Positions 1-54,485 are shown, counted from the stretch's first letter. The stretch: DNA of 64,000 bases from Ginglymostoma cirratum (GCA_024137785.1 JAHRHZ010000032.1:5379993-5443992); one strand, 5' to 3'. A program made the numbers and translations. The notes: generated by a model not told the origin, from the letters alone.

Positions 1-448
1 GTACCATCTAGGACAAAAGCAGCCCAATTGATTGGTACCACAACCACAAACATTCACTTCTTCCACTACTGACGCTCAGTAGCAACAGAACCTATCTAAA
101 GGATGCACTGCAGCGATTCAGTAAGGCTCTTCAGACAGTACTTTTTAAACCCACACCCACTATTATAAGGGTTTAGGCCCGAAACGTCAAGTCTTCCTGC
201 TCCTATGCTGCTGCTTGACCTGCTGTGTTCATCCAGCCCCATGCTTGTTATCCCACTACTATCTGGAAGTTTTGGGGTAGTAGACACATGCTAACACCAC
301 CGTTTCCGAACTGCTCATCACCCTGACCTGGAAATATATCGCCATTCCTTTAGTGTTGCGGGTCAAAACCCTGGAACCCTCTCCCTAATGGCATTATGGG
401 GCCATATACAGCATGTGGACTACAGCTCACCATCTTCAAGGGTAACTA
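1..448 (+). mobile_element. 3' part of the same LINE family; its tail resumes at about 2506-2562 after a CR1 insertion
   Basis: Homologous to 49560-49980; broken at aagggtaacta and continuing as gtgatgggcaataaatgctg at about 2508. Confidence 0.75.
167..251 (+). mobile_element. 5'-truncated Penelope-like fragment (half hammerhead core)
   Basis: TSD cccactattat / cccactactat (156-166, 252-262); nearly identical to 3414-3499. Confidence 0.75.
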
Positions 449-2505
449 CTGAATTCTAAGGAACTCTTGGACAGAGATAACAGCAGTCCTCACGTGAAGG
501 TGTTAAATTGGGGGTGGGGACAAACTACAACAATATTAAGGGTGAACTGGGAGAATATTGATTGGAGGCAGCTCTTGGAGGGTAAATCTACAGACATAAG
601 AGAGTATTTCAAACAGCAGTTGTTCAGGAGCAGCACATTCCTGCAAGAAGGAAGGACAGGTATGGCAAGTTACAATAAACCTTGGATGATCAGGGATGTT
701 ATGATCTTGGTCAATAAGAAAAAGGAAGCATAAGTAAGGATGGGAACTGAAAGCCCACGAAGTACAGAAGGAAAGTAGGAAAGAACTTAAACAAGGAATT
801 AGAAGGGCTAAAAATGGTCATGAAAAGCTGTTAGCAAACAGGATTAATGAGAATCCCAAGGCTTTTTAATACATATATAAAAAAGGAAGAGGGTAGCCAG
901 GGAAAGGGTTGACCCACTGAAAGACAACAGGAGGGAATCTATATGGTCGAGCCATAAGAGGTAGGTCCTAAACAAATACTTTGTGTCCGTATTCAAAGAG
1001 AAAGAATCAATGCAGGATGATCCCAGGGAAGGGAGTGTCGAGTTTCTAAGCCAAGTTGCTATTAAAAAGGAAGAGGTGTTATGCATCTTAAAAACTAAGT
1101 CCCCACACCTGATGGGATCTATCCCAGAATATTGAGGGAGGCAAGAGAACAAACTGCTGGAGCATTAACAGACATCTTTGTTTCTTATTTAGCCACAGGT
1201 TAAGTCCCAGAGGATTGGAGAATAGCCAATGTTATCCCATTGTTTAAGAAGGGTAACAGGGATAATACTGGAAATCAAAGGCCTGTGGGAATCAGATGTT
1301 GGCAGTAGGGAAAAGATCCATACGCACTTAGAAGCAAATAGACTCATTAGCGATGGACAGCTTGGTTTTGTGCAGGGGAGGTTGTGCCTCATTAACTTTG
1401 AAATCTTGAGGTGGTGATGAAGGTGATTGATGCAGGAAAAGCAGTTGATGTTGTCTAAACGGACTTCAGTAAAGCCTTTGACAAGGTCCCTCACGGCAGA
1501 GGGGTACAAAAAGGTGAAGGCACATGGTATCGTGGTGAGCTGGCAAGATGGATACAGAACTAGCTCAGTCATAGGAGACTGAGTGTAGCAGCGGAAAGAT
1601 GCTTTTCAGAATGGAAGGTTGTGACTACTGGTGTTCATAATCGTGACTGAAAACGTGACTGGTCTAATTAGCAAGTTTGTGGATGATAAAGATTGGTGGA
1701 GTTGCGAATAGTGCGCAGGATTGTCAGAGGATACAGCAGGATATAGATCAGTTAGAGGCATGGGCAAAAACATTGGCAGATGGACTTCAATTCGGACAAA
1801 TGTGAAGGTGATGCATTTTGGAAGGTCAAGTACAGGTAGAAATTATACAGTGGATGGCAGCACCCTTTCAGTAAGGATACACAGAGGGATCCGTGTGTGC
1901 AGGTCCACAGATCACTGAAGGTGGTAGCACAGGTTGAGAATGTAGTAGAAAGGCTTATGGCATGCTTGCCTTCATTGGAAAGGGCATTGAATATAAAAGG
2001 ATAGACAAGTTGTGCTGCAGCTTTACAGAACCTTTGGTTAGGTCATACTTGGAATATTGCACACAGTTCTGGTCACCAGACTAGCAGAAAGATGTGGATG
2101 CTTTGGAGAGGTCACAGGAAAGGTTCGCCAGAATGTTATCTGGTATGGGGGATTTTAGCTATGAAGGAGGGTTGGACAGACCACGTTTTGTTTTCCCTAG
2201 GGCTGAGGGGCTAATTACAAGGGGACACAGGTTCAAGGTGCCGTATCGTTTCAAAGAGATGTGCAAGGCATTATTTGTTTTTTTACTCAAAGGGTGGCGA
2301 GCGCCTGGAACGTGTTGCCAGAGGTGAAGGTGGAAGCAGACCATAAGAGCATTCGAGCAGCACTTAGACCAATACTTGAATAGGAGGGGATTAGAAGGAT
2401 GCAGAGTCTGTAAACAAAGACAATTTTAGTATGGAAAGACAAAATGTGTCAGTGCAGGCTTGGAGGGCTGAAGGGCCTGTTCCAGTCCTGTATTGTTCTT
2501 TGTTC
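449..2505 (+). mobile_element. Decayed CR1 (HER1-like) LINE, ORF2 remnants and 3' tail
   Basis: NKPWM, GFVQGRLCL, DFSKAFDKV, VMHFGR and LEYCxQFW remnants with frameshifts; ends gggcctgtt...ttctttgttct. Confidence 0.88.
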
Positions 2506-2988
2506 TAGTGATGGGCAATAAATGCTGCCCTAACCAGCGACGCTCATGACACGAATTAATTCAAAACGTCAAGCCAGAGACAGTTTCAAAAAAAAGGAAT
2601 ATTGGATTAAAAGTAAAAAAGGGGAAAAAAGTTTTTTAAACTTGTTTTTAAAATATCCAACCATTAAAACCTGAATAAGTGCAACTTTTTCGGTGTTGGT
2701 GTTTCATTGTGAAACATTAACTACTTATCAATTTCTTTTAAAAAAAGTGTTGGCAATTAATACAGTATGTCAAAGTACATGTGGAATTCAAAATGCTCAA
2801 AAATAGACTCTTGCTTCACTTCAGACAAATTTTAACTTGCTGCGGTGCGATTAGTTTGTGTCTAGATCAAAAGTAAAGATGCTGCTCACTGCATTGCAGT
2901 GGGGAGCTAAGTAAAATGATGCTATTCTCATGACACGCATGGGGCTGGATGAACACAGCAGGTCAAGCAGCATCGTAGGAGCAGGAAA

Positions 2989-3388
2989 NNNNNNNNNNNN
3001 NNNNNNNNNNNNNNNNNNNNNNNNNNNNNNNNNNNNNNNNNNNNNNNNNNNNNNNNNNNNNNNNNNNNNNNNNNNNNNNNNNNNNNNNNNNNNNNNNNNN
3101 NNNNNNNNNNNNNNNNNNNNNNNNNNNNNNNNNNNNNNNNNNNNNNNNNNNNNNNNNNNNNNNNNNNNNNNNNNNNNNNNNNNNNNNNNNNNNNNNNNNN
3201 NNNNNNNNNNNNNNNNNNNNNNNNNNNNNNNNNNNNNNNNNNNNNNNNNNNNNNNNNNNNNNNNNNNNNNNNNNNNNNNNNNNNNNNNNNNNNNNNNNNN
3301 NNNNNNNNNNNNNNNNNNNNNNNNNNNNNNNNNNNNNNNNNNNNNNNNNNNNNNNNNNNNNNNNNNNNNNNNNNNNNNNNNNNNNNNN
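2989..3388. other. Assembly gap (400 N) inside a palindromic insertion
   Basis: Run of N; both flanks belong to one TSD-bounded inverted-repeat element. Confidence 0.99.
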
Positions 3389-3403
3389 TTCATCAGAAAA
3401 CCA

Positions 3404-3439
3404 TTTTCTGATGAAGGGTTTAGGCCCGAAACGTCAAGG
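3404..3439 (+). ncRNA. Minimal type I hammerhead ribozyme motif
   Basis: uuuu CUGAUGA A GGGU-UUAG-GCCC GAAACGUC aagg: intact core, 4-bp stem II, palindromic ACGU stem III, weak stem I. Confidence 0.7.
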
Positions 3440-4264
3440 TTTCCTGCTCCTACGATGCTGCTTGACCTGCTGTGTTCATCCAGCCCCATGCTTGTTATCT
3501 CGGATTCTCCAGCATCTGCAGTACCTTTTATCTCTATTCTCATGACACTATAGGTCAGCCACCTCAGATAGCTACTCTGAGATTTCAGTGTTCAAGGTTG
3601 CAACAACTTTTGCCTCAAGTTGTTGTAGCATGTGTACATAAATAAGGGAGGGTTCTGGCTATCATGTTAATATTGCAATGAAGCCAACTCTCATCACTGT
3701 TGTGCTAAACTAAGGTGTTGCTAAACTTGAAGCCCATATATGGTTTTATACATTTTGCATTAGCAGAAAGGTTATTTTTGAAAGATTAAGGAGGTGTATA
3801 TTCTGAAAGCTACAAACAAAAACATAAAAATGCACAATGAACTTTACCAACTATAGTAATTAACAGGGCTCAAACAGATTACATAGTGAGTTTAATTGCT
3901 CCTGCGCAAGATCAAATCAAAGTCAAATGCTTCAGTAAAAACTTCAAATGTCATTGCAGCACCCTGCCTATTGATTCCAAGTGAAACAATAGAATAAAAT
4001 TCAAATAGAAGAAGTTCTTTGAATGGAGTTTCATTTTAGAAAATTATACAAGAGGGAAGCAGCTTTAGAAATACCACAAACAGGTGGAACTGCCGCTCAC
4101 TCTAAAGCAGAATCTTAAATGACCTTTGTTTCAAAGTTTTACCAGGGTGGGGGATGGGGTGAATTATACAGGGGGAAAATTTAATTCCAAAAAGTCTTTC
4201 CATATTCTACTCCACTGGAGTAGGATGCATTAATGGCTATCATCGGAGGGCAGTCAAGAAAAAC

Positions 4265-6360: not shown

Positions 6361-6437
6361 AAATACAAAACACAATAACTAAGTCAGCACCAAGAAAATA
6401 TTTTGTTTAATTTGATTTGAATTATTGTAGTCACATA

Positions 6438-9247: not shown

Positions 9248-9729
9248 CTACGAAGTGAAGGAAATACTATTAAATGCAATTAAAAGGATAGATTCTTTAT
9301 AATTCTAAACCACCAGTTGGAACAATCTAAAGACAATATACTTGATGTATGATACACACCAACTTTGGTCATGAATTGTTCCACTATATAGTGCTGAACA
9401 TTCTGCTTAACCGAAAAGCTTTTTGACAATTCCTGCCCACAGTAACCCACATTGCACACTCACAATCATGCAAAATAAGTTAAAGCAAAAAGAAATTCTG
9501 TTGGTAGTGGTGGCATGGAAAAGAATGAATTCACTAGACCCATCCCGTGTTAACCATTTAGAAGCAACATCTAACAGTATTATCTTGTCTGTGCTATTGC
9601 TTACAAGTGTTGACCAATAATTTTAATTTTTCTCTATTTTCAAAGAAAAGCATTTTTGTATATACAGTAAAATTTTAGATTTTCTAAAAAGCGGAGGAGA
9701 CCTTACAAAGAACTGTTGAAATATTTTAC

Positions 9730-10152
9730 CTTCTGTTTTCCAGTCAATCTCAATGGCAAGTGAAGAGACTTCTTGTTTTTTCAACCACGTGTTACCTCGT
9801 TGTTTAATCTGGGCAGTAACGTTGCAAAAATACTTTCCTCTATCAGAGGCTAGAGCCTGTTGCATCTGAAACTTGAAAGTATGTAGCTCAGGCTTCATAA
9901 ATATGATCTCTCCTTTCTCTGCACGCTCAATATATTCATCAAACAGTTGTAGGGTCCAATCCTGATCCATGGTTGCTATAGGCACAGTCACTTCTGGAGT
10001 TCCATTCAGCTGTTTTGGGCTGACATACCAGGCTACAGTCAGCTTTGCATCATCTGCGTTTTGTAAATCCAACACCCGGCACTCAAGCTCAGCTGATTCC
10101 CCTGTGGAACTAGGTACCTTGATGGAGTTTAGCTGAACAGTGTATGTAGGAT
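9730..10152 (-). CDS. PTGFRN: PTGFRN exon 5, Ig domain 4
   Basis: Acceptor atccacag, donor gtaaaa, 423 nt, phase 1-1. DPTYTVQL...AELECRV...VAWY...SDRGKYFCNVT. Confidence 0.95.
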
Positions 10153-10299
10153 CTGTGGATGCAATCAGAATGAAGATTATTTATATAAACCTCAAAAGAA
10201 GTTCAACTGATACAGTTCATTACATGGTGATCGGGTAGGTAACTATTTAAAGAAGGCCAACAAAAAAAAAAAAAAAATTGCAGTTGGATTTTTTTTCTT

Positions 10300-10612
10300 A
10301 AATACATTCATGGGGCATGGGCACTGCTAGGCCAGCATTTATTGCCCATCCCTAATTGCCCAGACGGCAGTTAACAGTCATCCACATTACCGTGGGTCTG
10401 AAGTCACATGCATGCCAGACCAGGTAAAGATGGCAGTTTCCTTCCCTGAAGTAAACCAGGTGGTTTTTTTTTTTGACAATCGGCAATAGATTCATGGTCA
10501 TCAGAGACTCATCTATCCATTCCAGGCTTTTTCAACCGAATTCAGATTCCACCATCTACTGTGGCAGCATTCAACCCAAGTCCTCAGAACATTATCTGGG
10601 TTGCTGGATTAA
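10300..10612 (-). mobile_element. Same SINE family, 5'-truncated
   Basis: Reverse-complement match to about 12780-13080. Confidence 0.85.
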
Positions 10613-11029
10613 TTTTCATCAATAAACTGGTTAACAGTGTTAGAAGAACATTCCACTTCGAACAGCATTTTGTTATCCAGGCCTGAATCTCCAGATTTGT
10701 TTGCAGGTTCAAATAACGACACAAGAAACTCTAAGTACACCAGTATTTCAAAAGAGTTCCAATGAGGTCCCGGAACAAGTTGCCGGAAACAATTTCCTTC
10801 AGCTATTTCAAAACAACTGAGAAAAGAAAAAAGGGACATCGTGGGCAATTAGGCCCAATGAGCCACACCAACCCAAAAGTAAACAACTCCACAGGAAAAT
10901 GTTACCCTACGTTCACATTAAAACTGCAGCTTCAAATTGTAAATGTAGTCTGAATTTGGAAATCCAATGCATGATCAGACACTGGATCAGGCAAATGAGT
11001 GTCAAATTTGCACTACACCTTTAAAAGAA

Positions 11030-12290
11030 AAGTAGGAAAAAGGAAACAAAACTGGGAACCAAAGGCTAATTAGCCTCAAACTGTTGGGAGTATACTGGAA
11101 TCCAAGAAGGTCTTAATAATGCACTTAGAAAAATGTCCGATCAGACTGTAGCTTAGAAAAAGAAAATCATGTTTCAAATTTATAATCATTTTTTCAGAAT
11201 GTAACTAGCAAGCTGGCCGATACGAGGACAGTAGATGTAGTAAAACCTGGACTTCCAAAAGGCATTCAATAACATGCCACACAAAAAGTTACCAGATAAG
11301 GGAAGAGCTGAGAGCTAGGGTAACATATTAGCTTGGATAGCGGATTGGATAAATGGGCAAAGAGTATGAATAAATGGAGAATCTTGCATTGGCGGATTGT
11401 GACTAGTGAAATGCCACAAGGATCAGTGCTGGGGCTTCAAAAATTTCCAATCTATATTGACAATTTAGCAGACCAGAGAGCAAATAATATTTAAGTTTGC
11501 TGACAACACAAAGCTAGGTTGGAAGGAAGGGAAAAAAAAGGATGGAAGAGGATGAAGAGATATAACTAGATTAAATGAGTGGGCAACAAGTGCGGTCATT
11601 CCCTTTGATTGTAGGGATGGAAAAATCTAAAGGTGCAAAACTTGCAAATGATATTCATGGCACTTGGGCGTATTTATGCAAAGATTTCAAAAAAGTTGGC
11701 AGATATAAACAATTAGAAAAGCAAATAGCACACTTGTTTTTATTCTAAAGCACCAGTTGCCTTGTAACAATGTAGTCTTGCTTATACAATTGTATAGGCC
11801 TTTGGAGAATACTGCATGCTGATTTGGTCTCCACATCCACAACAGATCTACGTTGGAGCTAGCATAGCATATGGTTCCTGGAATAACAAGGATGTCCTAT
11901 GAATTGGTGTTTTACTTTCTAGAGTTTTGAAGAATGAGGGTGATCTCACTGAAACATTCAAGATGCTGAGGGGGATAGATACAAAAGTCACTTCCCCAAG
12001 TTGGAGAATGTAGAACACAGGACCAGTGTCTCAAGATGGAGCAGAGCATCTAGGTTGGAGATGTGGGATGAATTGTTCACTCAAAAGGGCCGTGAATCTT
12101 TGGAATTCTGTGCCTTAAGGACGTAAATGTTCCATCTTTGAATACATTTAGGGTTGAGACACACTGATCTTTGGACTCTCAGGGAATCAAGGGATCAGGA
12201 GCAGATATTACAGCCAAAGCCAAAAATCAGCCATGATCATATTAACCATGAAGTAAGTTTGACAATGTAAAATCTGCTCCTGCTCTTATT
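11030..12290 (+). mobile_element. Old CR1 LINE RT/3' remnant
   Basis: DFQKAF, PQGSVLG and KFADNTKL remnants. Confidence 0.8.
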
Positions 12291-12744
12291 TACAGGACTT
12301 ACGAGTGAGGAACAGCCTGGAAGGGAAATCTTTATTTTGAAGCCAGTTTAGTCAATTGCTGGTTTGCAGCATGAAGCCTCAACTTGAAAGTGGATTGCAT
12401 AGGTCATTCTAATTCATGAGTTACTTCAATATAAAGGGGACAAAATGCTTTACCTGAACACAGCATCAACACCACCAGGCAGAAGCTGGACAAGTGCAGA
12501 AGTGGGTTCTTACTGGGATCCTGTGAGAATCTCTTCCAGCAAGCAGCTAAGTGGGGTCAGGAGTCAAGGGGGTTTGTGAATGGCTGAAGGTGGAAGAGGC
12601 AGAAGACAAAGGTTTAATTTACCATCACGCACAGGAGCACTGGGCTGCTGGCTTCCTTGTAAAGACTCTGGAATAACATTCGTCTTCTTAATGACCCACA
12701 AGTAAATCAGGGATTGCAAAACAAAAACCATATACACCACAAAA

Positions 12745-13100
12745 GGGAGGCGAAGGCCTTGTGGTATTATCGTTGGACTGTTAAATTGAGAGACGCTAAT
12801 AACATTCTGGGGACCTGGGTTCAAATCCCGCCACAGCAAATAGTGGAATTTGAATTTAATAAATATCTGGAATTAAGAATCTAATGACCACCCTGAATCC
12901 AGTGTCAATTGTTGGAAAAACCCATCTGGTTCACTAATGCCCTTTAGGAAGGAAACTGCCATCCTTACCTGGTCTGGCTTACATGTGACTCCAGACCCAC
13001 AGCAATGTGGTTGACTCTCAACTGCCCTCTGGGCAATAAATGCTGCCTAGCCAGTGATGCCTTCATCCCATGAATGAATTAAAGAAAAATGAATTAAAGA
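12745..13100 (+). mobile_element. tRNA-derived SINE, full length, sharing head/body and tail with the LINE at 46294-50040
   Basis: A-box-like start, B-box 12817-12829, body aaaacccatctggttcactaatg...cagacccacagcaatgtggttgactc, tail gggcaataaatgctg...catgaatgaat. Confidence 0.85.
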
Positions 13101-14475: not shown

Positions 14476-14514
14476 CTGTAATAAACAAACAAAAAGCATT
14501 GTAGTGTTTGTAGA

Positions 14515-20300: not shown

Positions 20301-20304
20301 TCAA

Positions 20305-21251: not shown

Positions 21252-21391
21252 AAATAAGAGCCGAAAGAACTGCGGATACCGTAAATCAGAAACAAAAACG
21301 AAAGTTGCTGGAAAAGCTCAGCAGGTCTGGCAGCGTCTGTGAAGGAAAAAACAGCGTTAACGTTTCTGGTCCGGTGACACTGCTCCAGAAT
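21252..21391 (-). mobile_element. Penelope-like pLTR fragment, second subfamily, degenerate core
   Basis: 14-bp TSD with one mismatch, agggt(g/a)tctttatc (21238-21251, 21392-21405); homologous to 27202-27337. Confidence 0.75.
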
Positions 21392-22258: not shown

Positions 22259-22259
22259 T

Positions 22260-22600: not shown

Positions 22601-22607
22601 TATTTTG

Positions 22608-25845: not shown

Positions 25846-25849
25846 TTCT

Positions 25850-27201: not shown

Positions 27202-27432
27202 AAAAACCGAAAGAAAGGCGGATGCTGTAAATCAGGAACAAAAACAGAAGTTGCTGGAAAAGCTCAGCAAGTCCGGCAGCATCTAAGAAGGAAAAAAACA
27301 GAGTTGACGTTTCGGGTGTGGTGACCCTTCCTCAGAACCCAGACCCGAAACATTAACTCTGTTTTTTTTAACCCCTTCACAGATGCTGCCGGGCCTGCTG
27401 AGCTTTTTCAGCAACTCCGGTTTTTGTTCCTG
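27202..27432 (-). mobile_element. Palindromic Penelope-like pLTR remnant, second subfamily
   Basis: Perfect 16-bp TSD aacagcttatcttaat (27186-27201, 27433-27448); inverted arms of about 85 bp. Confidence 0.8.
27301..27340 (-). ncRNA. Minimal type I hammerhead ribozyme motif, sense to PTGFRN pre-mRNA
   Basis: ggguu CUGAGGA A GGGU-CACCAC-ACCC GAAACGUC aacuc: intact core with a 5-bp stem I. Confidence 0.72.
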
Positions 27433-33058: not shown

Positions 33059-33210
33059 TAGCAAGGTGTAGAGCTGGATGAATGCAGCAGAAGGGTCCAG
33101 ATCCGAAACACCAGCTTTCCTCCTCCTCTGATGCTGCGTGGCCTGCTGCGCTCATCCAGCTCTACACCTTGTTATCTCAGACTCCAGCATCGGCAGTTCC
33201 TACTATCTCT
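33059..33210 (+). mobile_element. Penelope-like pLTR fragment with short inverted 5' end
   Basis: TSD gat(t/a)ttgcttcagt (33045-33058, 33211-33224); the first 28 nt or so are an inverted copy of 33143-33174. Confidence 0.75.
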
Positions 33211-42831: not shown

Positions 42832-42963
42832 AACGTTTCGGGTCCGGTGACCCCAAAACATTAACTCTGAAGGGAAAAACACAAATGCTGCCAGACCTGC
42901 TGAGCTTTTCCAGCAACTTTGTTTTTGTTCGTGATTTACAGCATCCAATGTTCTTTTGGTTTT
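42832..42963 (+). mobile_element. Penelope-like pLTR fragment, second subfamily, short inverted 5' end
   Basis: Perfect 13-bp TSD taaaaacttaggt (42819-42831, 42964-42976). Confidence 0.75.
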
Positions 42964-44374
42964 TAAAAACTTAGGTGCGTGGGATAGAAAGTAACAGTTG
43001 AAATAAGGCAAAATTTCATTTTGGGCAATCGTCAATAGCTATTTTTGTTTTTTTGAGTCTTCAACATAAAGTTTAGAAAAGCATTTCACAGGAGCATTAC
43101 AAAGTTAAATTAGGCAACAAAGATAGGACTTGGGTATATAACTCAACACTTGACTGACAAGGTTGGTTTTAACAAAGAAGACAGGCAGAGATTTAGAGAT
43201 GAGACTTCCTAATTGAAAGGCAGGATAGGTCTGAAAACGCAACTGGTCTGCTGCTACATTGCTATTACCCCAAATCGCTTACAAGCCAAGAAAATTTGAG
43301 GGGTAAAAATCTACGACTAATTAACAACCAAAGGGTTTTGGTGAATGAATGGAAACAAAATTTCAGAACTTCAGCTTGGTCTTTAAATCTTACAAAGTGG
43401 ATACAATCTTTGGGCCGAAGTGACGGAATAATTTTGCCAATATGACGGTGTCCATTTGGAATAGAAGAATCAGCACGACAGGTCCAGAAGGAGAAGCCAG
43501 ATCAAAGTCAAAAACAAACCAGGAACAGCACAGTTGGAGGCAGCAAGTAAGCTCACACCAGATAGTGAAAGAAACTTGGGACAATTCTTTTTAAGGCTGC
43601 TTCTGAACTCCCTGTGGACCACAGTGGGAAATAGTCAATAGGGTGTTTTCCAGGTTGGCTATCAAGTGCCAGAGCATATAGGTTCTCTATCTTGGCAAAC
43701 TGCAATGGAAGATAACTATTCAACTTAAAATAAGTGAGTCTTGCAAAACACTGGGGGTGGGAAGGGGGTTAAACCCATCCACATGGGGCCTGCAGCTGAC
43801 GAGAACTTAGTTGGGCAGGTCTGCTTGACGCAGAGCTTGCATCCTGCCAGCAGAGAGCAACTGCCAGGCACTTAACACAATCCCCCCTTCCCTGCTGAAA
43901 TCTGAAGGAGAAAATCCAAATTAGTCTCCTTTAATTGCTCTGAGGCCCTTAATAAGCCATCCCGCGTCAAAGGCTGTTTGGAGCCATGGAAATTGCACAC
44001 CGGACAGGCTATTCTTAACTCCCACTGTTATTAGACTATATGCGAGAAAGGGGAAGGGATTATGTGGCTTCAAAATCAAGCCCTTAGTTAAAAAAGTGAA
44101 GGCCAATTGTTATGCCAGATTTTATTTCATTTCAGCATTAATGCCTAATACTATTTGACGTGTGGTAACAGGATTGTTACAAGATCAATACTGAAATTTT
44201 GTTGTGTGTCATCAGGATTACCAGTTGAGTAGTCAAAAAATAAAATTATGAAAAGATGAACTGGAATATTTTAGGTTGTGACTTAGGCCAACGCTGTAAA
44301 ATATATTACAACAAATCTAGTAATAAATTTTTTTTTTCTAAAAACCTAACCACAAGGTCAAGGTATCACAAAAC

Positions 44375-45345: not shown

Positions 45346-45541
45346 TGACTGAAAACAAAAATGCTACCAATCACAGTGGGTCAGGCTGCATCCATAGAAA
45401 GAAAGCAAGCAGGGCTCTGAAGAAATCATCTAGACCCGAAACATTAGCTTGGTTTCTCTCCACTGATGCTGCCTGGCCTGGTGCAATTGCCAGCATTTTG
45501 TTTCAGTTCAGATTCCAGCATCTGCAATAATTTGTTTCTAT
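45346..45541 (+). mobile_element. Older palindromic Penelope-like remnant, third subfamily
   Basis: TSD atctt(a/c)ttcca (45335-45345, 45542-45552); diverged inverted arms; CTGAAGA...CCCGAAACATTAG core remnant; shared tail ccagcatctgca. Confidence 0.65.
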
Positions 45542-46293: not shown

Positions 46294-49200
46294 GGAGATG
46301 TTGGTGTAGTTGAAAGGCTTAGAGTTTGGGGCTCTGGGTTCAAATCCCACCGTGGCAGATGATGGAATTTTAAATTTAATTAATACTAAAGAAAGCAGCA
46401 AGCTTACTGGCGATCATTTAACCACTGTTCATTTCTGCAAAGAAAAATAAACTTCTGGTTCACCAATGTCCTCGTGGAATGAAAATCTGTTGTCCTTATC
46501 TGGTCTGGCCTACACATAATTGCAGACCCACAGAAATGTGGTTGACTTTCAACTGCCGACTGAAAATGCCCTAGCAAGCCATTCAGTTGTATCAAACCAC
46601 GACTAAGAGCAAATAAAGGAATGAAACCAAGAAGATCACCCAGTAATGACAGTCATCTTACCAAGATCTTGGGGCTTGTGCCAGAATTGGGACAGCTGTC
46701 CCACAGATTAAACAAGCAATAGCCTGAAGTTGTTTGTGAAGCATACGATTCTAAGAGAATTATTATGCGCTGGAAACTACTAAAATCATCCAAGCGTTTT
46801 TGTGTCCCACTAGCAGGGCAGACCCACAGGAGGTGGCAGCACAGCAGTACACAATCTGTGAGCCTTAACCTGTACTCCAGACACCATCGCGTCAGGTCAA
46901 ATATGGGCAAAGAGACCTCCAGCTGACAAATCAGTACTCCTCCATATTGAATACAGTCTGAAGGCATCCAAGTTAATGGTAATGGCACAGCATGTACTTT
47001 GGATGGGGAACTTCAAGGTCCATCACCAAGACTGGCTCAATAGCAACAGTGAGTTTGCAGAGCTGTAAAGAATATAGCAGGTAGACAGGTTCTGTGACAC
47101 GTGCTGAAGGGGCCAAGAGGGGAAAGTTCTTTTTGACCTCATCCTCACCAATCTATTTGCAGCAGATGCTTTCAGCCATGATAATGTTGGTAGGAATGGC
47201 CAGTGCACAGTTCTTGTGGAGATGGAGTTGCGTCTTAACATTGAGGACATTGACACACCATGGTGTGTCAACTATCAGCATGCCAAATAAGAAACTTCAA
47301 ACAGATCTAGCAATTCAAGTCTGGGCACCAATAAGGCACTGTGGATTATCAGCAGATGGTATTCAACCACATCTGTAACCTCATGGCCTAACACATGTCC
47401 AGCTTTTTCATTACCATCAAACCGAGCAGTCAATCTCAGTTAGAGGAATACTGCAGGAAGGAAAGCCAAAAGTAGCACCAGAATACTTAAAAGTGCAGTG
47501 TCAAACAGGTGACATGTGTCAAAACAGCAGAAGCAGTATGCAATAGACAAGGTAATATGATTCCACAACCAATGGATCAGACCTAAGCTCTGCAGTCTTG
47601 CCATATCCAGGTGTAAATGGTAGAGGACAGCTAACATGAGTTGGAGGCACCACAAGAATTCTCATCCTCAAAAGATGGGGGTGCCCATCATATTAATACA
47701 AAAGTCAAGAGTGAAATATTTGCATCTCTCATCAGCCAGAAGTTCTGAGTAGATGATCCATCATTTTCTCCTCCTGAGGTCCCTAACACAGAGATGCCAG
47801 TGTTCAGCCAATAATTCATTCTGCATGATATCAGGAAACAGCTGAGGCAATGGATAATGCAAAGACTGACAAAATCATGACAACAATACCAAAGAACCTT
47901 TTCTCCAGAAACAGCCACACCATTAGCTGAGCTGTTCCAGCAAAGCTGCAATACTAACCCCTACCCTGCTTCCTCTAAGCTTTGCCTCTGGGAGGGTCCG
48001 CACACACCAACTGGACTGTAGAAGCATACAAGCAATGACTCATAGTACTGAAAGCTTCTGCTGTGTACGGAATTTAGAAGGTAATGTAAAGACAGGAATG
48101 TTCAGAGCGAAAGCAGCTACTATCCAACAATTCTGCTCTCAATCATCAGCAAAATGATGGAATGATTCATTGATACAGCTATGAAGTAACACTTGCAAAA
48201 TAATAGTCTGGTCATTGGATTCTGCTAGGGCCACCCAGCATCTGATCTCATTACAACCTTGATCCATACATGGACAAAAAACAAGGGAGCTGAATTCCAG
48301 ACAGAAGTCAAGAGTGACTGCTTTCGGCATCAACTGAATTTGAGACACAGAGACTGAACAAAACTGGAGTCAATGGGAATAGAGGGGAAAATACTTCTTA
48401 GTCATGAGTCATAAGTAAAACAAACAGACAGTTGCAGATAACAAGGTGTAGAGCTGGATGAACACAGCAGGCCAGGCAGCATCAGAGGAACAGGAAAGCT
48501 GACGTTTCGGGTCTGGACCCTTCTGCAGAAATGGGAGAGGGGAAGGGGGCACGGTGATAGCAGGTAGATAGTGGAGCAGATAGGTGGGAGAAAAGACGGA
48601 CAGCTCAAGGAGGCAGGGTTGAAGCTAGTAAAGGTGAGTGTAATTAGGAAGTTGGGATGGGGGTTGGTCAGTGAGATGGGAGGAGTGGGTGGAGCACCTA
48701 TCCACACTTCCTGCCTCACTGACCAAGCCCCACCTCCACTTCCTACCTACACGCACCTTTACTAGCTTCATCCCTGCCTCCTTGAGCTGTCCATCTTTTC
48801 TCCCACCTATCTGCTCCACTATCTACCTGCTATCACCGTGCCCCCTCCCCCTCTCCCATTTCTGCAGAAGGGTCCAGACCCGAAACGTCAGCTTTCCTGT
48901 TCCTCTGATGCTGCCTGGCCAGCTCCACACCTTGTTAGCTCAGACTCCAGCATCAGCAGTTCCTACTTTCTGAGACAGTTTGCAGTCGTTGGAGGTCAAT
49001 CATCTCACCCCAAGGACATCACCATAAGCAGTGTCACTCAAGGTCATGAGCTAGTCCCAGCCATCATTAGTTGCTTCGTCAATTACACTCCCCTCATTAT
49101 ATGGTCTGAAGTAGGGATGTGCTTTGATGAATACACGACATTCAGAATGAGTACATCAAGACTCTCCAAATACTGAAGTAGTGCACGCCGAAATGCAGCA

Positions 49201-50040
49201 ATACCTGTACGACACCCAGACTTGGGCTCGTAAGTGCCAAGAAACATTTCTGCCACATGTGCCAGGCAATGGCCTTCTCAGAGAGAACCTAAACGTTGAT
49301 CCTTGATGTTCAATGGTATTAAAGTTGACGAATCTCCTATCAACATTCCAAGAGTCACCACGGACCAGAAACTGAACTGAATGAGCCATAGAAATACAGC
49401 GACTGCAAGACAGGTCAGCAGCTCAGAATACTGTGGCGAGTAACTCATCTCCTGTCTCTCCAAAACCTGTCTGTTATTTTCAAGACACAAGTCAAGAGTA
49501 AGATGGAATACTCTCTATTTGTCTGGATGGGTCCTTCTCCAAGGACATTCAAAAAGCTTGACACCATCCAAGACAAAGCAGCACTATTACTTGGCATCAA
49601 TCCACCACCTTCAGCATTCAGTTTCTTTCCCAGTTGACATGGAGGTGACAGTGACAGCAGTCCAGGCTACCAGATGGTAGCGTGTACCATCTACAAGGTG
49701 CACGACAGTAACTCAACAAGGTTCTTCTGGCAACATCTTCTAAACCTGCACTGCTACCAACTAGAAGGACAGGAGCAGCAGACGCACAGGAACACCATCA
49801 CCTAGAAGTTCCCTCCAAGCTAGTCACCATCTTGACCTGGGAACATATCACTGTTCCTTCACTGCTGCTGGATTAAAATCCTGGAATTCCCTTCCTAATG
49901 ATACTTGGGCATTTCTATACCCCAAGAACTGTCATAGCTTAAAATAGCAACTCACCACCATCTTCTCTAGAGCATTTAGGGGATGGGCAATAAATGCTGG
50001 CTGAGTCAACAATATCCATATCCCACGAATGAATAAAAAC
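46294..50040 (+). mobile_element. Near full-length decayed CR1-group LINE with tRNA/SINE-like 5' UTR and no visible ORF1
   Basis: B-box gggttcaaatccc at 46336-46348. Endonuclease start LTKILGLVPELGQLSHRL at 46657, MGNFKVHHQDWL at 47003, DLILTN near 47135. Decayed RT QGxxLxP and xDD motifs at about 49030-49135. 3' tail gggatgggcaataaatgctgg...gaatgaataaaaa. Confidence 0.75.
48438..48972. mobile_element. Long palindromic Penelope-like remnant (arms of about 250 bp) nested in a LINE
   Basis: TSD agacagttgcag / agacagtttgcag (48426-48437, 48973-48985); centre near 48697. The ORF track gives near-identical peptides on both strands. Both cores read CUGCAGA (mutant). Confidence 0.82.
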
Positions 50041-50052
50041 AAATTGATCTCC

Positions 50053-50150
50053 ATTTCTGAAGAAGGGTCTAGGCTCGAAACGTCAGCTTTCCTGCTCCTC
50101 TGATGCTGCTTGGCCTGCTGTGTTCATCCAGCTCTACACCTTGTTATCTC
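50053..50150 (+). mobile_element. Penelope-like pLTR fragment with hammerhead core at 50057-50084
   Basis: CUGAAGA A GGGU-CUAG-GCUC GAAACGUC followed by the family tail; no clear TSD. Confidence 0.72.
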
Positions 50151-50151
50151 C

Positions 50152-50385
50152 GATGACCTTACTATCGTTTTCATGTTGCCATTGCTATCCACAATCATAA
50201 AACTCTGGTTCACAAATATTCTTTGAGTGGAAATCTGCTGCCAGTATCTGATCTGGTTTATATCTGATTCCAGACCCACAGCAGATGCCTTCTAAAACGG
50301 TTTACCACTCAGTTCAAGGGCAATTAGGGATGGGCAATAAATGCTGGCCTTTCCAATGACTCCCATATTCTGTGAAAGAATAAAA
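50152..50385 (+). mobile_element. SINE variant with longer body (junction ccactcagtt|caagggcaattaggg)
   Basis: Body homologous to 46400-46590, then the LINE tail. Confidence 0.7.
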
Positions 50386-50589
50386 TTGAAGCAAAATTTG
50401 AACTATTCCCACAACCCTTTCACTGCTTTGTTATTACCAGACTGCTTATCCACCATCAGGCTTGGACAAGTTGCAATGTGCTCAATTTAAATAATGGGGT
50501 AGACAAGGTTGTTAGCTTTGATTCCTAGTCACAAACATTCAACTTTTACCAACAATTCCACCCCTTATCTAAACAAGCTGTACCAGATT

Positions 50590-51238
50590 GCAGTGAACTT
50601 TACTGTCCTATCAGAGATCAGGGGCTTCTGAACTCATCTCCAACACAGACTGCCCACTTCCACCATGAGTCAGCCTTCATCTCCACCATCACTTCAATAT
50701 ACTTGCTGCCAAAACTCTTCTCCATGCCTTTTGTCAATCCCAGAGTGCAGTGCACTATTCCAATATTCTCCTGGCCAACTACCCATCTTCCATCATGCAG
50801 CAGCTGCAGTGTTACTCAACCTTTGCTGTCTAAATACTACAAGAACTATGCCCCACTGGTTCAACACCCCTGCACACAATAACCTACTCTGGGAGTACTG
50901 CCAACCAACACTACAAATGTAAAATTTTCATCTATGTTCAAATCTCTCAGCTATCTTGCCTATATGTGTCACTCCATCCAATACTACAACCATTTGAGGA
51001 CTCTACATTCCTCCAATTGTGGACTCTTCTGCACCTCCTGTCCACTGTACTCCAGCGCTGACAGCTATGCCTTCAATCCTGTGGATTCCAAGCCCCCCTC
51101 ATTCTCCTCCAAGACTCTCCTTAATACTTACCTGTTTTGTCACTTGCTATGGCAGCAATCTTTGTATGGTTGTTTATTTTCCCTTAACTACATTCAAGGC
51201 ATTTCACTAAGTTAAAGGCACTATAAAAATACAGTTGT
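50590..51238 (+). mobile_element. L2 LINE 3' remnant
   Basis: Pyrimidine-rich decayed ORF2 end (LIHAFV/LHWLP-like region) and L2-type tail ttaaaggcactataaaaatacagttg. Confidence 0.55.
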
Positions 51239-52099
51239 ATTTTGAACTGTTGTATACAGTTACAAATTAAAATGACTACATGCACAAAGTAATGGGGTGT
51301 GACTGGCAGAAGTGAAGTTATACTTCAATTAAAAAATGAGAGAAAAACCAGCAAAAAAATCTGAACAACTACACTTGGTAACTCAATATCACAATCCCAT
51401 ACAAATTACTTGCAATAAGGTGTGGCTGCAAACTTTTTAAGAGAACTGTTTTTAGGGCATCACTATGGCAACAATGTGGTCAGAAATAAACAGGTACAAA
51501 CATCAAAATGGAAGAAAATTTTATAGAAATTACCAGCCCAAATATTACACTAAGTGAGCACATTGTACGTTTATTAGGGAGTCAGTTGGCAGGCTGTGAC
51601 TAACTCCAGAATGAAATAGAATGATCTCAGAGTTTGGAAAGATTAATCACCTAGACTGCATTCAGCTTCTTTTTACATACTGGGCTCAAAGTCCAAACAT
51701 TACCCTCTAAAAGGAATTTAATAAAAACTGACATTTAAATAGAAACAGGTCTATAATTGCTAGTGAAGAGTTTAAAAGAAGTGACAATTAAGATTTTCCT
51801 TTCAGGAGCATGGATTATTACATTCAGATGTGTGGTAGACCCAGGCGGTGTTAGGCTGCTGAGATGTGTCAAACATTATTGAACATTACATTTATAAATA
51901 ATGCATTTTTTGAAATACAACTTAGGGCCCCAGTAGTAACGACCCTAGATAAAAGAACATTTCTGGCCGGTCAGGAGAGCAAAGAGAGATTCAAAAGTTC
52001 AAGTCATATTTGGAGGTGAAAGTGAAAAGGAGACCATTGTATGCTGGGTCGCATACTACCTTCTCTTTTTCCTAAAGTGCAGGAATAAATACATTTTAG

Positions 52100-53400
52100 C
52101 ATCGTCCACACGAGTAAATGAACACAGACAGCGAACCCGCACAGACATTAATCAGGAATCGCTGCCCGGGCTCGTTCTCGGTTGAAAAAAAACTCAAAAT
52201 TTAAACTGGGAACACAGAGGACAGAAAAGGACGATTACCACCATGCGCCGAGTTTAAATTAATTTCGCAACCGCACTTCCCAGAAAACATTCAAAAAAAC
52301 CTTCACAGCAAAAAAAAACAAAAAAACCCAAAGAAGCATCAAGATTATTGGAAGAGTCGAACCATGGGAACAGCTCTAACAAATGAGGCCAGGGTCTAGG
52401 GGAAATAAAAATCACTAGAGAATAATTTCCCGAGATCAGCAGCTTCAAGGGTGAGGCAGATCGTGAGTTAACAGGGAAACAAAGTCCAATGTTAGCACTG
52501 TTTGTTTTCTTGAACAAAAAGAAGCCGAATGGGCTGAGAATAGTTATAAAGCCAGGGCAAACGGCTTGGGAGTGTTTCAATGGATCGTGTGTATCTCGTG
52601 AAACGCTTTCACACTGTCCTCACTCAGCACTTCCCCCGGGGATCACAGCGCTCTTATCCCACGTCCCCTCTCGCAGCCCTCGGCTTGGCGTTCACTCCCC
52701 GTCCCTCAGTATCGCAGCCTCCGGGACTACGCTCAGGACAGATGTGAGAATACAGGGTTAGTGTTAGGGGAATAGGAAATTCAGAGGTTCTTCACCGCAG
52801 CCAGCGCCCCCACACTTACCCCAACTGACCACCAGAAGCAGCAGCAACAGCGAACGCTCCATCCTCTCCCAGGATCTATCTTTCCGGCAAACACTCCCCG
52901 AAGACAGGAAAAAAAAATCCCTCCCCCTCTCACTCTCAACTGGAGACTTTCCAACAGCTCACTCTGTCTCCAGGTGGCACTTCTTGCAAAATGAGCCAAT
53001 TCCAGACAGAAACTCCAAACTTCTCTTTTCAAACTTAAACTTTATCTACTGCCAAAAGGTTTATTTTATTTTTGGGAACGGGAAAGCCCGAAGCGAACTT
53101 TAACAGTCAAACACTTGGAAAGTTTTTGATGCTTCACTACAGAGTCCAGATGGAAACACCCAGGAACTCCCCCTTCTTTCAGGTAATTGGCTCCGTTAAA
53201 ATGGGAGGGCAGAGACGTCAGGCGACACTCCCAAAAAAAATCAAATGATTGCAATCCTGCCTCATGGGAATTTTTATTTTCTGCAGCTGGAAGATAGGTT
53301 ATTTGTTCATGTTCGTCGATATCCCTTCGTTGGAAAGCATTGGGATCAATGCAGATTATGATTCGGCGTTGGCATTCGGTTGCTGAGAGTTAGCATCACT
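52100..53400 (-). promoter_or_regulatory. CpG-enriched promoter / first-exon region of PTGFRN, with candidate CCAAT box (53186-53190) and CRE-like TGACGTCT (53213-53220)
   Basis: Visibly higher CpG and GC content than the flanks, repeat-free, and surrounding the signal-peptide exon. Motifs were read directly; TSS unknown. Confidence 0.6.
52820..52862 (-). CDS. PTGFRN: PTGFRN coding exon 1, signal peptide MERSLLLLLLVVSW(G)
   Basis: ATG at 52862 in a strong Kozak context (GAGGATGG); 14 codons plus 1 nt, then donor GTAAGT. Splices in phase 1 to exon 2 giving MERSLLLLLLVVSWGLILA-RVVKVP. No upstream ATG for about 400 nt; CpG-enriched surroundings. Not called in the ORF track. Confidence 0.88.
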
Positions 53401-53574
53401 TCCTCTGCGAACATTCGCCTCATCCTGCAAATAAGTGTTTAAGACATCCTAATTCAAATTGGGCAACTAGCATGGTTTTGCCCTGGATGGATGTTGTGCA
53501 ACATAAAATCAATTCACACAGAAAGAAAAAGCAATCGATCTATTTTCCTGTAATCACAATCGATTCACACTCCT

Positions 53575-53855
53575 AGGGTTGAAGGTTCAAACCCCACGTC
53601 TCAGACTTGAACCTAACAGGTAAGCACTGAAGAAGTGCTAAACTGGGAGAGGCATGATCCCTCAGATGAAGATAAAAGGTACATAGACACCTTGGCATTA
53701 TTGGGAGAAGAGCAATGGAGTTTTCCCATTGTCCTGGATAAAATGTATCCCCCAACCAACACCAAAACTGTTAATCTGATCCTTTGATTCGTTGCTGTAT
53801 ACAATTTGATTACTACATTGCCTCCAATTCAACGTGACTAAATTTGTGGATGACT
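53575..53855 (+). mobile_element. DeuSINE (SacSINE1-like), decayed
   Basis: Deu-domain-like gaagagca..ggagtt.tccc..tgtcctgg...aa..t.tatccc.caaccaacacc after a tRNA-like head. Confidence 0.65.
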
Positions 53856-54319
53856 ACTGAAATTTAGTTGAACTGCTTGCTGACACCATGACACATGACA
53901 TAGACTATTTGAGTACCATGGTTAATTCCATCTGAGCTCAAACAGATAAATTAATACAGCATCAGTTCCCAAATTAATTGCATGTTTTTGCTTTCACTTC
54001 TCTACCTAGCAGAATTTGACTTTTACTCATATGGACACGATTCTTTCTATGTTACAATTTAGGTTTTTTAAAAAAAGAAATTATCTTTTTAACATCCTTC
54101 ACTAACTTGTAATTTATCAAAAGATCATTTTGCAGCCACCTTCTTTAAAAGGTGAAAAATACAAGTTGGTACAGCCTTTTTTTTTGCCTCAAACCTTTAA
54201 CACTAGGGGTTTAACTTTAATTTAACTCGCCCAGTAAGGAAGAACCACCATTTTTACATCATTGACTTTATTGGCATGTAAAAGCACATACTGAGGAAAA
54301 CAGTTTGTTGATCCAATCC

Positions 54320-54485
54320 GAGATAACAAAGCATGGGGCTGGATGAACACAGCAGGCCAAGCAGCATCATAGGAGCAGGAAAACTTGACGTTTCGGGCCT
54401 AGACCCTTCATCAGAAAGATGATGTTTTTGCATCAGAAAGCCTTGTTATCTCGGATTCTCCAGCATCTGCAGTACCTTTTACCTC
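54320..54485. mobile_element. Penelope-like pLTR remnant with inverted segment
   Basis: Perfect 14-bp TSD tgttgatccaatcc (54306-54319, 54486-54499); same subfamily as 2937-3533. Confidence 0.8.
54384..54417 (-). ncRNA. Minimal type I hammerhead ribozyme motif
   Basis: uuu CUGAUGA A GGGU-CUAG-GCCC GAAACGUC aag. Confidence 0.7.

What the first reader, a model, noticed from the sequence alone, without database searches (positions are those of the whole stretch)
167..54485. Dispersed family of hammerhead-ribozyme-bearing, TSD-flanked palindromic mini-elements (at least 10 copies, 3 subfamilies)
Seen: short insertions at 167, 2937, 21252, 27202, 33059, 42832, 45346, 48438, 50053 and 54320 share all or part of CUGANGA-A-stem II-GAAACGU(C/U). 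Nine have 11-16 bp TSDs and seven have an inverted partial copy at one end. Stem II stays paired while its sequence changes: GGGU-UUAG-GCCC, GGGU-CUAG-GCCC, GGGU-CCAG-ACCC, GGGU-CACCAC-ACCC, GGGUC-ACCG-GACCC. Stem III is only the palindrome ACGU. Established: Penelope-like elements carry such minimal type I hammerheads in their pseudo-LTRs, these are thought to cleave as dimers via a palindromic stem III, and the elements often insert with inverted ends. Inference: these are non-coding PLE remnants or a non-autonomous ribozyme-bearing family at about one copy per 6 kb. No RT or GIY-YIG ORF is in the window, so the PLE link is not shown directly.
Basis: partly seen in the sequence, partly recalled or inferred. 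Interest (0 to 1): 0.8.

Follow-up and report, generated by a model that had tools for sequence, protein, structure and literature searches.

The report
Penelope-type hammerhead mini-insertions, mostly relics
The ten short repeats are real, separately inserted end-pieces of Penelope-like retrotransposons; four still carry an intact minimal hammerhead ribozyme motif, a kind of element already described in other animals and already met by this scan elsewhere in this genome.

Summary
All ten places hold copies of one repeat superfamily: 16 arms in four subfamilies (A, B, C and a single D), about one insertion per 6.4 kb.

**What holds up**
- Eight insertions have clear 10-16 bp target-site duplications. 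One has 8 bp and one has none.
- Seven have an inverted second arm.
- Four copies (3408+, 50057+, 54414-, 27335-) keep a complete minimal type I hammerhead: CUGANGA, a bulged A, stem II, GAAA and the palindrome ACGU followed by C.
- The other six are truncated or mutated.

**What does not hold up**
- Stem II shows no compensatory change; only its loop and a U-G/U-A pair vary.
- Rfam hammerhead models do not match.
- PolyA RNA reads cover the family heavily in both orientations, but no ends pile up at the cleavage site.

**Why Penelope-like**
- The anatomy fits: variable duplications, two alternative 3' ends 33-36 nt apart, and this "tail" on exactly one arm in 6 of 6 two-armed insertions.
- The window holds no Penelope RT or GIY-YIG remnant. 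Its only RT relics belong to a LINE.
- The same hammerhead class in metagenome contigs sits beside RT/GIY-YIG ORFs. There it also forms the same fold-back mini-insertions.

The scan has reported this family before on other DNA of this genome. It is real but ordinary.

The parts
167..251 (+). Subfamily A solo copy with the short 3' end. It starts at A9 of the hammerhead, so CUGAUG is missing. TSD at 156-166 and 252-262 (10 of 11).
2937..3534 (.). Subfamily A fold-back insertion. The antisense arm is 2937-2988, then the gap, then 3389-3400. The sense arm is 3403-3534 and carries the 35-nt tail. An intact minimal hammerhead lies at 3408-3435. TSD is 15/15 at 2922-2936 and 3534-3548.
21252..21391 (-). 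Subfamily C solo copy in the long (tailed) form. Its 5' end lies 2 nt before the core, and the core is mutated (CUGGAGC). TSD 13 of 14.
27202..27432 (.). Subfamily C fold-back. The minus-strand arm (27202 to about 27351) has the 34-nt tail and an intact hammerhead at 27335-27306. The plus-strand arm (about 27341-27432) starts inside stem II and has the short end. TSD 16/16.
33059..33210 (.). Subfamily B. A 33-nt inverted head (33059-33091, short end) is joined to a sense arm (about 33088-33210, tailed) that begins at G5-A9 of the core. There is no complete hammerhead. TSD 13 of 14.
42832..42964 (+). Subfamily C tailed copy whose 5' end is a 22-nt snap-back through the stem II hairpin (42832-42853). 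CUGANGA is absent. TSD 14 of 15.
45346..45541 (.). Subfamily D, the only copy. The inverted arm is 45346-45413 (short end) and the sense arm is about 45410-45541 (tailed). CUGAAGA is present, but stem II is broken and ACGU has become ACAU. TSD 10 of 11.
48438..48972 (.). Subfamily B long hairpin. The arms are 48438-48688 (-) with the short end and 48702-48972 (+) with the tail. They are 93% complementary with a 13-nt spacer, and each reaches about 150-165 nt upstream of the motif. The core is mutated to CUGCAGA on both arms. TSD is 8 nt.
50048..50150 (+). Subfamily B solo copy with the short end. An intact core lies at 50057-50084, but helix I has only 2 bp. No significant TSD.
54320..54485 (.). 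Subfamily A. The sense arm is on the minus strand (54320 to about 54426, short end) with an intact hammerhead at 54414-54387. The other end is an inverted 45-nt piece (54441-54485) consisting of little more than the tail. TSD 15 of 16.
3455..3516 (+). Example of the conserved 3' module: GATGCTG and, about 55 nt later in the tail, its complement CAGCATC. The pair is present in all four subfamilies and brackets the short 3' end.

Best explanation
These are dead-end retro-insertions made by Penelope-like retrotransposons (PLEs).

**What each insertion is (shown).** Each one is the extreme 3' piece of the PLE template RNA. It holds the hammerhead of the pseudo-LTR plus the roughly 65-100 nt behind it.

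**How it arose (inferred).**
- The PLE reverse transcriptase starts copying inside this module, at one of two sites 33-36 nt apart. That gives the short and the tailed 3' ends.
- It copies towards the 5' end and usually stops within about 25 nt of the hammerhead.
- Often both cut target strands prime a cDNA, or the enzyme switches template. Two arms then meet head to head, one short and one tailed.
- A staggered cut leaves a TSD of variable length (8-16 bp).

**The hammerhead.** It belongs to the source elements. Conservation shows this: it and the GATGCTG block are islands of 72-83% identity between the A/B and C subfamilies, which are otherwise 40-55% alike. In the source element's RNA it presumably helps process the transcript, probably with help from the element's protein or as a dimer. 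In the inserted copies it has no job and decays; 6 of 10 are already truncated or mutated.
For: **Family and ribozyme motif**
- The family and its extent are confirmed.
- Four complete minimal hammerheads are present against 0.002 expected.
- They show the traits that define PLE min-HHRs in PMC4209133: an unpaired base between A9 and 10.1, G10.1-C11.1, a palindromic ACGU with no loop 3, and a short helix I.
- Conserved islands fall at the hammerhead and the 3' module.

**Insertion anatomy**
- TSDs are variable in length and significant.
- There are two alternative 3' ends, with the tail on exactly one arm in 6 of 6 two-armed insertions here. The same holds in 2 of 2 evaluable fold-backs in other animals' PLEs.
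- This matches the optional 30-40 bp tail at one end and the inverted 5'-truncated copy described for PLEs (PMC8557442).
- It also matches the two internal RT start sites and the cutting and extension of both strands shown in vitro for the anole PLE PAc (PMC11167929).

**Geometry.** The short end lies 64-70 nt and the long end 99-104 nt after the cleavage site here. In an unrelated PLE family these distances are 66 and 110 nt.

**Link to PLE genes**
- The same hammerhead pattern occurs in 100 metagenome loci.
- It lies about 100 nt after GIY-YIG ORFs in L026, L050, L087 and L037.
- It also lies at the head of a 961-aa ORF in L066. That ORF has an RVT_1 domain and a C-terminus homologous to those endonucleases.
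- The fold-back mini-insertion in L038, with a 14-bp TSD, is 98% identical to the 3' end of the L026 element, including the last 72 nt of its ORF.

**Helix I.** It covaries across families: 78% paired in register against 18-19% when slid by one, and 0 of 1000 shuffles reach the observed value.
Against: - No PLE RT or GIY-YIG remnant is in the window. I scanned 72 ORFs against Pfam and ran tblastn with seven PLE ORF pieces.
- I could not reach a full-length element of these particular subfamilies, so the link for this genome rests on analogy.
- Rfam hammerhead models do not match, even on 71-76 nt stretches at E up to 10.
- Stem II shows no compensatory change.
- MFE folds of monomers prefer competing hairpins.
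- PolyA RNA reads show no pile-up of ends at the cleavage site. Depth is nearly equal on both sides of it in the A copy (10,657 against 12,343).
- Nine of ten insertions are shorter than about 170 nt per arm. Random 5' truncation of a 3-4 kb element would not give this.
Confidence: 0.85

Rival explanations
1. The units are a self-standing non-autonomous family: a short, SINE-like parasite of the PLE machinery of about 90-150 nt, headed by the hammerhead. It would have its own master copies rather than being by-products of full-length PLE transcripts.
For: - Nine of ten insertions have the 5' end of their longest arm within about -25 to +20 nt of the first core base.
- In vitro the minimal PAc template is just the stretch behind the hammerhead.
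- A 2026 preprint argues that animal retrozymes are non-autonomous PLE derivatives.
Against: - The 5' ends are scattered, not fixed: +6, -5, -2, about -9, about -16, inside stem II, and about -165.
- About half of the RNA reads that run past the motif share one upstream sequence, which resembles the long B copy. Longer copies are therefore common (loose ends at 54417).
- There is no tRNA-like head and no tandem array.
- In another PLE family the same kind of mini fold-back is plainly a piece of the autonomous element.
Confidence: 0.1
2. The motif is kept in the source elements for a reason other than self-cleavage, for example as a binding or folding platform for the element's protein. Its likeness to a hammerhead does not mean catalysis in vivo.
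For: - No read ends appear at the cleavage site in polyA RNA.
- There is no stem II covariation and no Rfam match.
- Published min-HHRs cleave poorly in vitro.
- In PAc, cleavage needs the protein and is dispensable for insertion in vitro, and no RNA-seq reads begin or end at the site.
Against: - All catalytic core positions are kept in three diverged subfamilies.
- H17 is not G in 103 of 105 motifs, and helix I covaries across families.
- C3/G8 mutants and the compensatory double mutant behave as expected for a ribozyme in PAc.
Confidence: 0.2
3. These are fold-back DNA transposons (MITE-like), and the hammerhead-like string is incidental.
For: Seven insertions are partly palindromic and flanked by direct repeats.
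Against: - TSD length varies from 8 to 16 bp.
- The arms are unequal: 22 to 257 nt against 92 to 271 nt.
- Three copies have no inverted arm at all, and two of them still have TSDs.
- The two ends differ by the tail.
- No transposase is present.
Confidence: 0.02

Closest known systems
Minimal hammerhead ribozymes (min-HHR) in the pseudo-LTRs of Penelope-like elements (Cervera and de la Pena 2014, PMC4209133)
   Same: - Type I topology and a full catalytic core.
- An unpaired base between A9 and 10.1, and a G10.1-C11.1 pair.
- Helix III reduced to the palindrome ACGU, with a short helix I.
- Mostly solitary copies from truncated elements, some as pairs on opposite strands.
- Several sequence families per genome.
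   Different: - Stem II here is 4 bp, whereas the Schistosoma families described there have 7-8 bp.
- These particular subfamilies were not linked to an RT/GIY-YIG ORF in this genome.
- I could not find them described in the papers I read.
PAc (Poseidon of Anolis carolinensis) and the PLE insertion mechanism (Frangieh et al. 2024, PMC11167929; Craig et al. 2021, PMC8557442)
   Same: - Two 3' ends a 30-40 nt 'tail' apart, with the tail on one end only.
- Inverted 5'-truncated arms.
- Insertion ends some 65-100 nt behind the hammerhead cleavage site.
- The module behind the hammerhead is the part always retained.
   Different: - In PAc the ORF starts inside the hammerhead. Here no reading frame is consistently open through the module.
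- The sequences are unrelated outside the core.
Non-LTR retrozymes of animals (Cervera and de la Pena 2020, PMC7229834; Li et al. 2026 preprint)
   Same: A type I hammerhead, no coding capacity and a likely PLE origin.
   Different: - Retrozymes are tandem repeats with a hammerhead in each unit and give circular RNAs.
- No tandem array of this family is in the window, and the copies have TSDs and fold-back arms.

Membership tests
PLE minimal hammerhead (min-HHR) | Catalytic core CUGANGA ... GAAA with H17 not G | tested here: met
   Complete in 4 of 10 insertions. The other six are truncated or mutated.
PLE minimal hammerhead (min-HHR) | Unpaired nucleotide between A9 and 10.1, and a G10.1-C11.1 pair | tested here: met
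   An A follows CUGANGA in every copy that has the region. G-C is found at the first stem II pair in 10 of 12 rows.
PLE minimal hammerhead (min-HHR) | Helix III reduced to a palindromic 15.2-16.2 (ACGU), with no loop 3 | tested here: met
   GAAACGUC in all four intact copies.
PLE minimal hammerhead (min-HHR) | Helix I of about 4-5 bp | tested here: inconclusive
   5 bp in 3408 and 27335, 3 bp in 54414 and 2 bp in 50057. Across 49 distinct flank pairs of this motif class, helix I is 78% paired in register and covaries.
PLE minimal hammerhead (min-HHR) | Compensatory changes in stem II | tested here: not met
   No pair changes on both sides, and the values do not exceed the shuffles. Only 12 rows from 4 subfamilies were available.
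PLE minimal hammerhead (min-HHR) | Self-cleavage after H17 | tested here: inconclusive
   No pile-up of read ends at the site in polyA RNA. That library does not target cleavage products, and no bench test was possible.
Rfam hammerhead families (Hammerhead_1 and relatives) | Score at or above the family's gathering threshold | tested here: not met
   No hammerhead match on the whole window or on 71-76 nt stretches at E up to 10. This is expected for motifs that lack helix III.
Penelope-like element insertion | One ORF with RT and a GIY-YIG endonuclease | tested here: not met
   - None in the window. The RT relics at 22789-23115 and 23936-24232 belong to a LINE with an AP endonuclease.
- For these subfamilies elsewhere in the genome the feature is not testable with these tools.
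- For the same hammerhead class in other animals it is met.
Penelope-like element insertion | Common 3' end with 5' truncation, often with an inverted 5'-truncated copy | tested here: met
   All arms share the 3' module, and 7 of 10 insertions have an inverted arm.
Penelope-like element insertion | Optional 30-40 bp tail, usually at one end only | tested here: met
   The tail is 33-36 nt and homologous across the four subfamilies. It is on exactly one arm in 6 of 6 two-armed insertions; among solo copies, 2 are short and 2 tailed.
Penelope-like element insertion | Target-site duplication of variable length | tested here: met
   8 to 16 bp in nine insertions, eight of them beyond the 0.3% chance level.
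Non-LTR retrozyme | Tandem repeats with a hammerhead in each unit | tested here: not met
   TRF finds three small unrelated arrays only.
MITE / fold-back DNA transposon | Equal terminal inverted repeats and a TSD of fixed length | tested here: not met
   The arms are unequal or absent, and TSDs range from 8 to 16 bp.
SINE | Pol III head (tRNA, 7SL or 5S) and a LINE-type 3' tail | tested here: not met
   No tRNA-like sequence, no Rfam match, and no A-rich or microsatellite tail.

The most novel reading that the evidence does not exclude
The mini-insertions may be genomic footprints of a two-ended integration. In that reading a PLE particle primes cDNA on both cut target strands, and each arm starts at a different one of the two RT start sites. 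That would explain why the tail sits on exactly one arm in 8 of 8 evaluable fold-backs, six here and two in other animals. Reverse transcription would also stop by design just past the hammerhead. The hammerhead plus the roughly 100-nt initiation module, held together by the conserved GATGCTG/CAGCATC pairing, would then be the minimal mobile unit of these elements in vivo.
Probability: 0.3. Interest if true: 0.5.

Novelty: new member of a known kind. Interest (0 to 1): 0.25.

Why it matters
It matters little for ribozyme biology. Minimal hammerheads in Penelope-like elements, their solitary truncated copies and their fold-back insertions are all in the literature.

Two things have some use:
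- **Annotation.** At about one insertion per 6 kb, with very deep read coverage on the element against single-digit depth on unique flanks, this family is a large share of the genome's repeats. It breaks assemblies at palindromes, as at the gap here, and it puts hammerhead-like strings and long hairpins into many transcripts. The hairpins mimic microRNA precursors in Rfam scans.
- **Mechanism.** The strict one-tail-per-insertion pattern and the conserved distances from the cleavage site to the two 3' ends are natural footprints that agree with the in vitro model of PLE integration. Counted genome-wide, they could test that model.

Tried and rejected
- **Rfam.** Scans at gathering score and at E up to 10, on the whole window and on two short stretches, gave no hammerhead family.
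- **Stem II covariation.** None was found.
- **Monomer and dimer folding.** Stem II forms, but competing hairpins and the near-palindromic stem II duplex dominate, so this says nothing about the active fold.
- **3' module folds.** Four of five give the same three-tier stem-loop, but the energies are not better than shuffles (z from -1.3 to +1.1).
- **Coding test of the module.** No frame is open in all copies, 27335 and 45417 have stops in all three frames, and A and B differ by non-triplet indels. For that reason I ran no further search on these peptides.
- **PLE coding relics in the window.** None were found.
- **Exact search for the conserved 31-nt module.** No hits in viral contigs or in bacterial and archaeal genomes.
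- **PDB sequence search with the L066 PLE ORF.** No match.
- **Chance match.** One metagenome hit (L048) lies inside a bacterial glycine-cleavage P-protein gene.
- **RNA reads.** No cleavage ends.
Full report
**What is there**

The string CCCGAAACGTC, with up to one mismatch, occurs 8 times in the window against 0.17 expected. An alignment sorts them into four subfamilies:
- A: 167, 2937 and 54320, about 95% alike.
- B: 33059, 48438 and 50053, 89-97% alike.
- C: 21252, 27202 and 42832, 71-84% alike and so older.
- D: the single copy at 45346.

Between A/B and C, the hammerhead stretch is 77-83% identical and a block around GATGCTGCC is 72-78% identical. The rest is only 40-55% identical. The motif and the block behind it are therefore conserved islands of the source elements.

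**The hammerhead**

I searched with a descriptor for a minimal type I hammerhead: CUGANGA, an optional bulge, a stem II of at least 4 bp, then GAAAC-GU-H. It finds four copies, at 3408-3435 (+), 50057-50084 (+), 54414-54387 (-) and 27335-27306 (-). First-order random sequence gives 0.002.

All four have the features that Cervera and de la Pena list for the minimal hammerheads of Penelope-like elements:
- an unpaired base after A9;
- a G10.1-C11.1 pair;
- helix III reduced to the palindrome ACGU.

Helix I is 5 bp in two copies, 3 bp in one and 2 bp in one.

The other six insertions lack a working motif:
- Three begin inside it (167, 33059, 42832).
- 48438 reads CUGCAGA on both arms.
- 21252 and 45346 have several core or stem changes.

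In stem II, GGG/CCC is almost invariant, the closing pair toggles between U-G and U-A, and no pair changes on both sides. Rfam's hammerhead models do not match, even when only 71-76 nt are searched at E up to 10. That is expected for motifs without helix III, but it means they are not members of those curated families.

**Insertion anatomy**

- *TSDs.* Eight insertions are flanked by direct repeats with 10-16 matched bases, a level reached by 0.3% of random intervals. 48438 has 8 exact bases and 50053 has nothing significant. The length varies, which argues against a DNA transposon.
- *Inverted arms.* Seven insertions carry an inverted second arm. It ranges from a 22-nt snap-back through the stem II hairpin (42832) to a 257-nt arm (48438: 93% complementary, 13-nt spacer).
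- *Two 3' ends.* Every subfamily has two alternative 3' ends. The short one lies 64-70 nt after the cleavage site. The long one adds 33-36 nt, and this tail is itself homologous across subfamilies.
- *Tail asymmetry.* In all six insertions where both arms reach a 3' end (2937, 27202, 33059, 45346, 48438, 54320), exactly one arm has the tail. The four one-armed copies split two short and two tailed. If arms chose independently, six of six would be expected about 1.6% of the time.
- *5' ends.* The 5' end of the longer arm lies within about -25 to +20 nt of the first core base in nine of ten insertions, and about 150-165 nt upstream in 48438.

**The gap**

The gap interrupts the antisense arm of insertion 2937.
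- The 52 nt before it are a perfect reverse complement of 3440-3491.
- The 12 nt after it are a perfect reverse complement of 3404-3415.
- The whole insertion is flanked by a 15/15 duplication.

So both sides belong to one palindromic insertion. The mirror image of the hidden part is 24 nt, and the 400 N are most likely a placeholder at a hairpin that the assembler could not cross. Craig et al. note this problem for these elements. No reading frame is involved.

**Is it a Penelope-like element?**

The window holds no such gene.
- Pfam on all 72 ORFs of 75 aa or more finds only immunoglobulin domains and two weak RT pieces.
- The RT piece at 23936-24232 lies downstream of an AP-endonuclease fragment on the same strand and most resembles R2-type enzymes. 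The piece at 22789-23115 shares its RT motif. I read both as LINE relics.

To get real PLE proteins I searched metagenome contigs for the exact motif CTGANGAAGGGT-N5-7-CCCGAAACGT. That gave 100 loci, most of them AT-rich animal-like DNA of unknown host.
- In L026, L050, L087 and L037 the motif lies about 100 nt after an ORF with a GIY-YIG domain.
- In L066 it heads a 961-aa ORF with an RVT_1 domain. That ORF's C-terminus is 36-41% identical to those endonuclease ORFs and carries the GIY-YIG signature.
- tblastn with these seven PLE ORF pieces finds nothing in the window (best E 0.12).

Those loci also reproduce the anatomy seen here. L005 and L038 are head-to-head fold-backs with 14-bp duplications and the tail on one arm only. 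The L038 arms are 98% identical to the 3' end of the L026 element, from 72 nt inside its endonuclease ORF, through the hammerhead, to ends 66 and 110 nt behind the cleavage site.

So the same hammerhead class, the same distances and the same mini fold-backs belong to bona fide RT/GIY-YIG elements elsewhere. For the subfamilies of this genome the link remains an inference.

**Support for the fold**

The flanks were not part of the search pattern, so helix I can be tested without bias. Over 49 distinct flank pairs, including the four copies of this window:
- The first four pairs are 86, 80, 80 and 65% paired in register.
- They are 18-19% paired when slid by one position.
- No shuffle out of 1000 reaches the observed value.
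- A-U, U-A, G-C and C-G alternate at the same positions.
- H17 is not G in 103 of 105 motifs.

Many loci are copies of a few families, so this is supportive rather than conclusive.

**RNA**

Two raw-read RNA runs of the same species label were laid on 49900-54600 at 88% likeness.
- In the polyA library the two elements are covered about 4,300-5,300-fold in each mate orientation, while the unique DNA between them has essentially no reads.
- 96% of the laid reads continue into unrelated sequence, so they come from other copies embedded in many transcripts.
- No place shows a pile-up of read starts or ends.
- In the A copy the depth is 10,657 within the hammerhead and 12,343 just behind the cleavage site.

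I see no sign of cleavage at steady state. This kind of library is not designed to show it, however, and most copies are dead. In two contig-based runs of unrecorded type, summed word depth on the elements is five orders of magnitude above the flanks. The tool warns that this is not a copy number, but it agrees with a very abundant family.

**Mechanism**

The data fit the picture from the anole element PAc:
- the protein binds the RNA just behind the hammerhead;
- it cuts both target strands;
- it starts reverse transcription at two internal sites that are one tail apart.

Short run-off or aborted cDNAs from such events, one from each strand or joined by a template switch, would give what is seen here. 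The clustering of 5' ends next to the hammerhead is not explained by self-cleavage, because the cleavage site lies on the 3' side of the core. It suggests either an RNA 5' end or a strong stop for the enzyme there. This last point is inference.

**A conserved pairing in the module**

GATGCTG, about 30 nt behind the cleavage site, and CAGCATC, in the tail, are complementary and present in all four subfamilies. Four of five single-sequence folds place the short 3' end inside the loop that this 7-bp stem closes. The stem does not vary, so there is no covariation, and the fold energies are not better than shuffles. It is a candidate for the stem-loop in which reverse transcription starts, and no more than that.

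**Verdict**

The kind is known, and earlier follow-ups of this scan reached the same reading on other pieces of this genome. Those notes call the genome a shark; I could not check the species because run labels are coded.

Noticed in passing
window 9623-18833, minus strand: Four ORFs (9626-10075, 14066-14488, 16174-16650, 18333-18833) match immunoglobulin V-set/I-set domains, with a best E-value of 2.5e-10. They look like exons of a multi-Ig-domain host gene, and several of the insertions probably lie in or near it.
   Followed up: partly
window 22789-25869: There is a decayed LINE on the minus strand. An AP-endonuclease fragment lies at 25535-25738 and an RT fragment at 23936-24232. A second RT fragment of the same type lies on the plus strand at 22789-23115. 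These are the only RT relics in the window, and they are not Penelope-like.
   Followed up: yes
window 48578-48811: Rfam scans at E-value threshold report plant microRNA families here (MIR1437 at 103 bits, MIR1858, MIR408, all far below their gathering scores). These matches come from the 250-nt perfect-hairpin geometry of the 48438 fold-back insertion. They are not microRNA genes.
   Followed up: yes
window about 49970-50040 and 50320-50390: Two copies of another repeat carry GGGATGGGCAATAAATGCTGGC and an A-rich end, like a SINE or LINE tail. They flank the 50053 insertion and show raised read depth.
   Followed up: no
window 3455-3516, and the same block in all tailed copies: GATGCTG and its complement CAGCATC in the tail are conserved in all four subfamilies and enclose the short 3' end. 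An inner CUG...CAG hairpin recurs as well. This may be the stem-loop where the reverse transcriptase starts. Fold energies are not significant.
   Followed up: partly
window 45346-45413 and 42832-42853: In two insertions the inner end of the inverted piece falls at the hammerhead cleavage site, within about 2 nt in 45346 and exactly at H17 in 42832. That is what a cleaved template would give. With two cases out of seven this may be coincidence.
   Followed up: no
loci L001-L100 (metagenome contigs): About a hundred contigs from host-associated metagenomes carry the same hammerhead class in AT-rich, animal-like DNA. Some have full Penelope-like ORFs (L066, L026) and some have fold-back mini-insertions (L005, L038). 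L048 is a chance match inside a bacterial glycine-cleavage P-protein gene. The host organisms were not identified.
   Followed up: partly
window 2937-3534: The two arms of this insertion are 64/64 identical where both can be read, and the TSD is 15/15. It is either very young or partly shaped by the assembly of a palindrome.
   Followed up: partly
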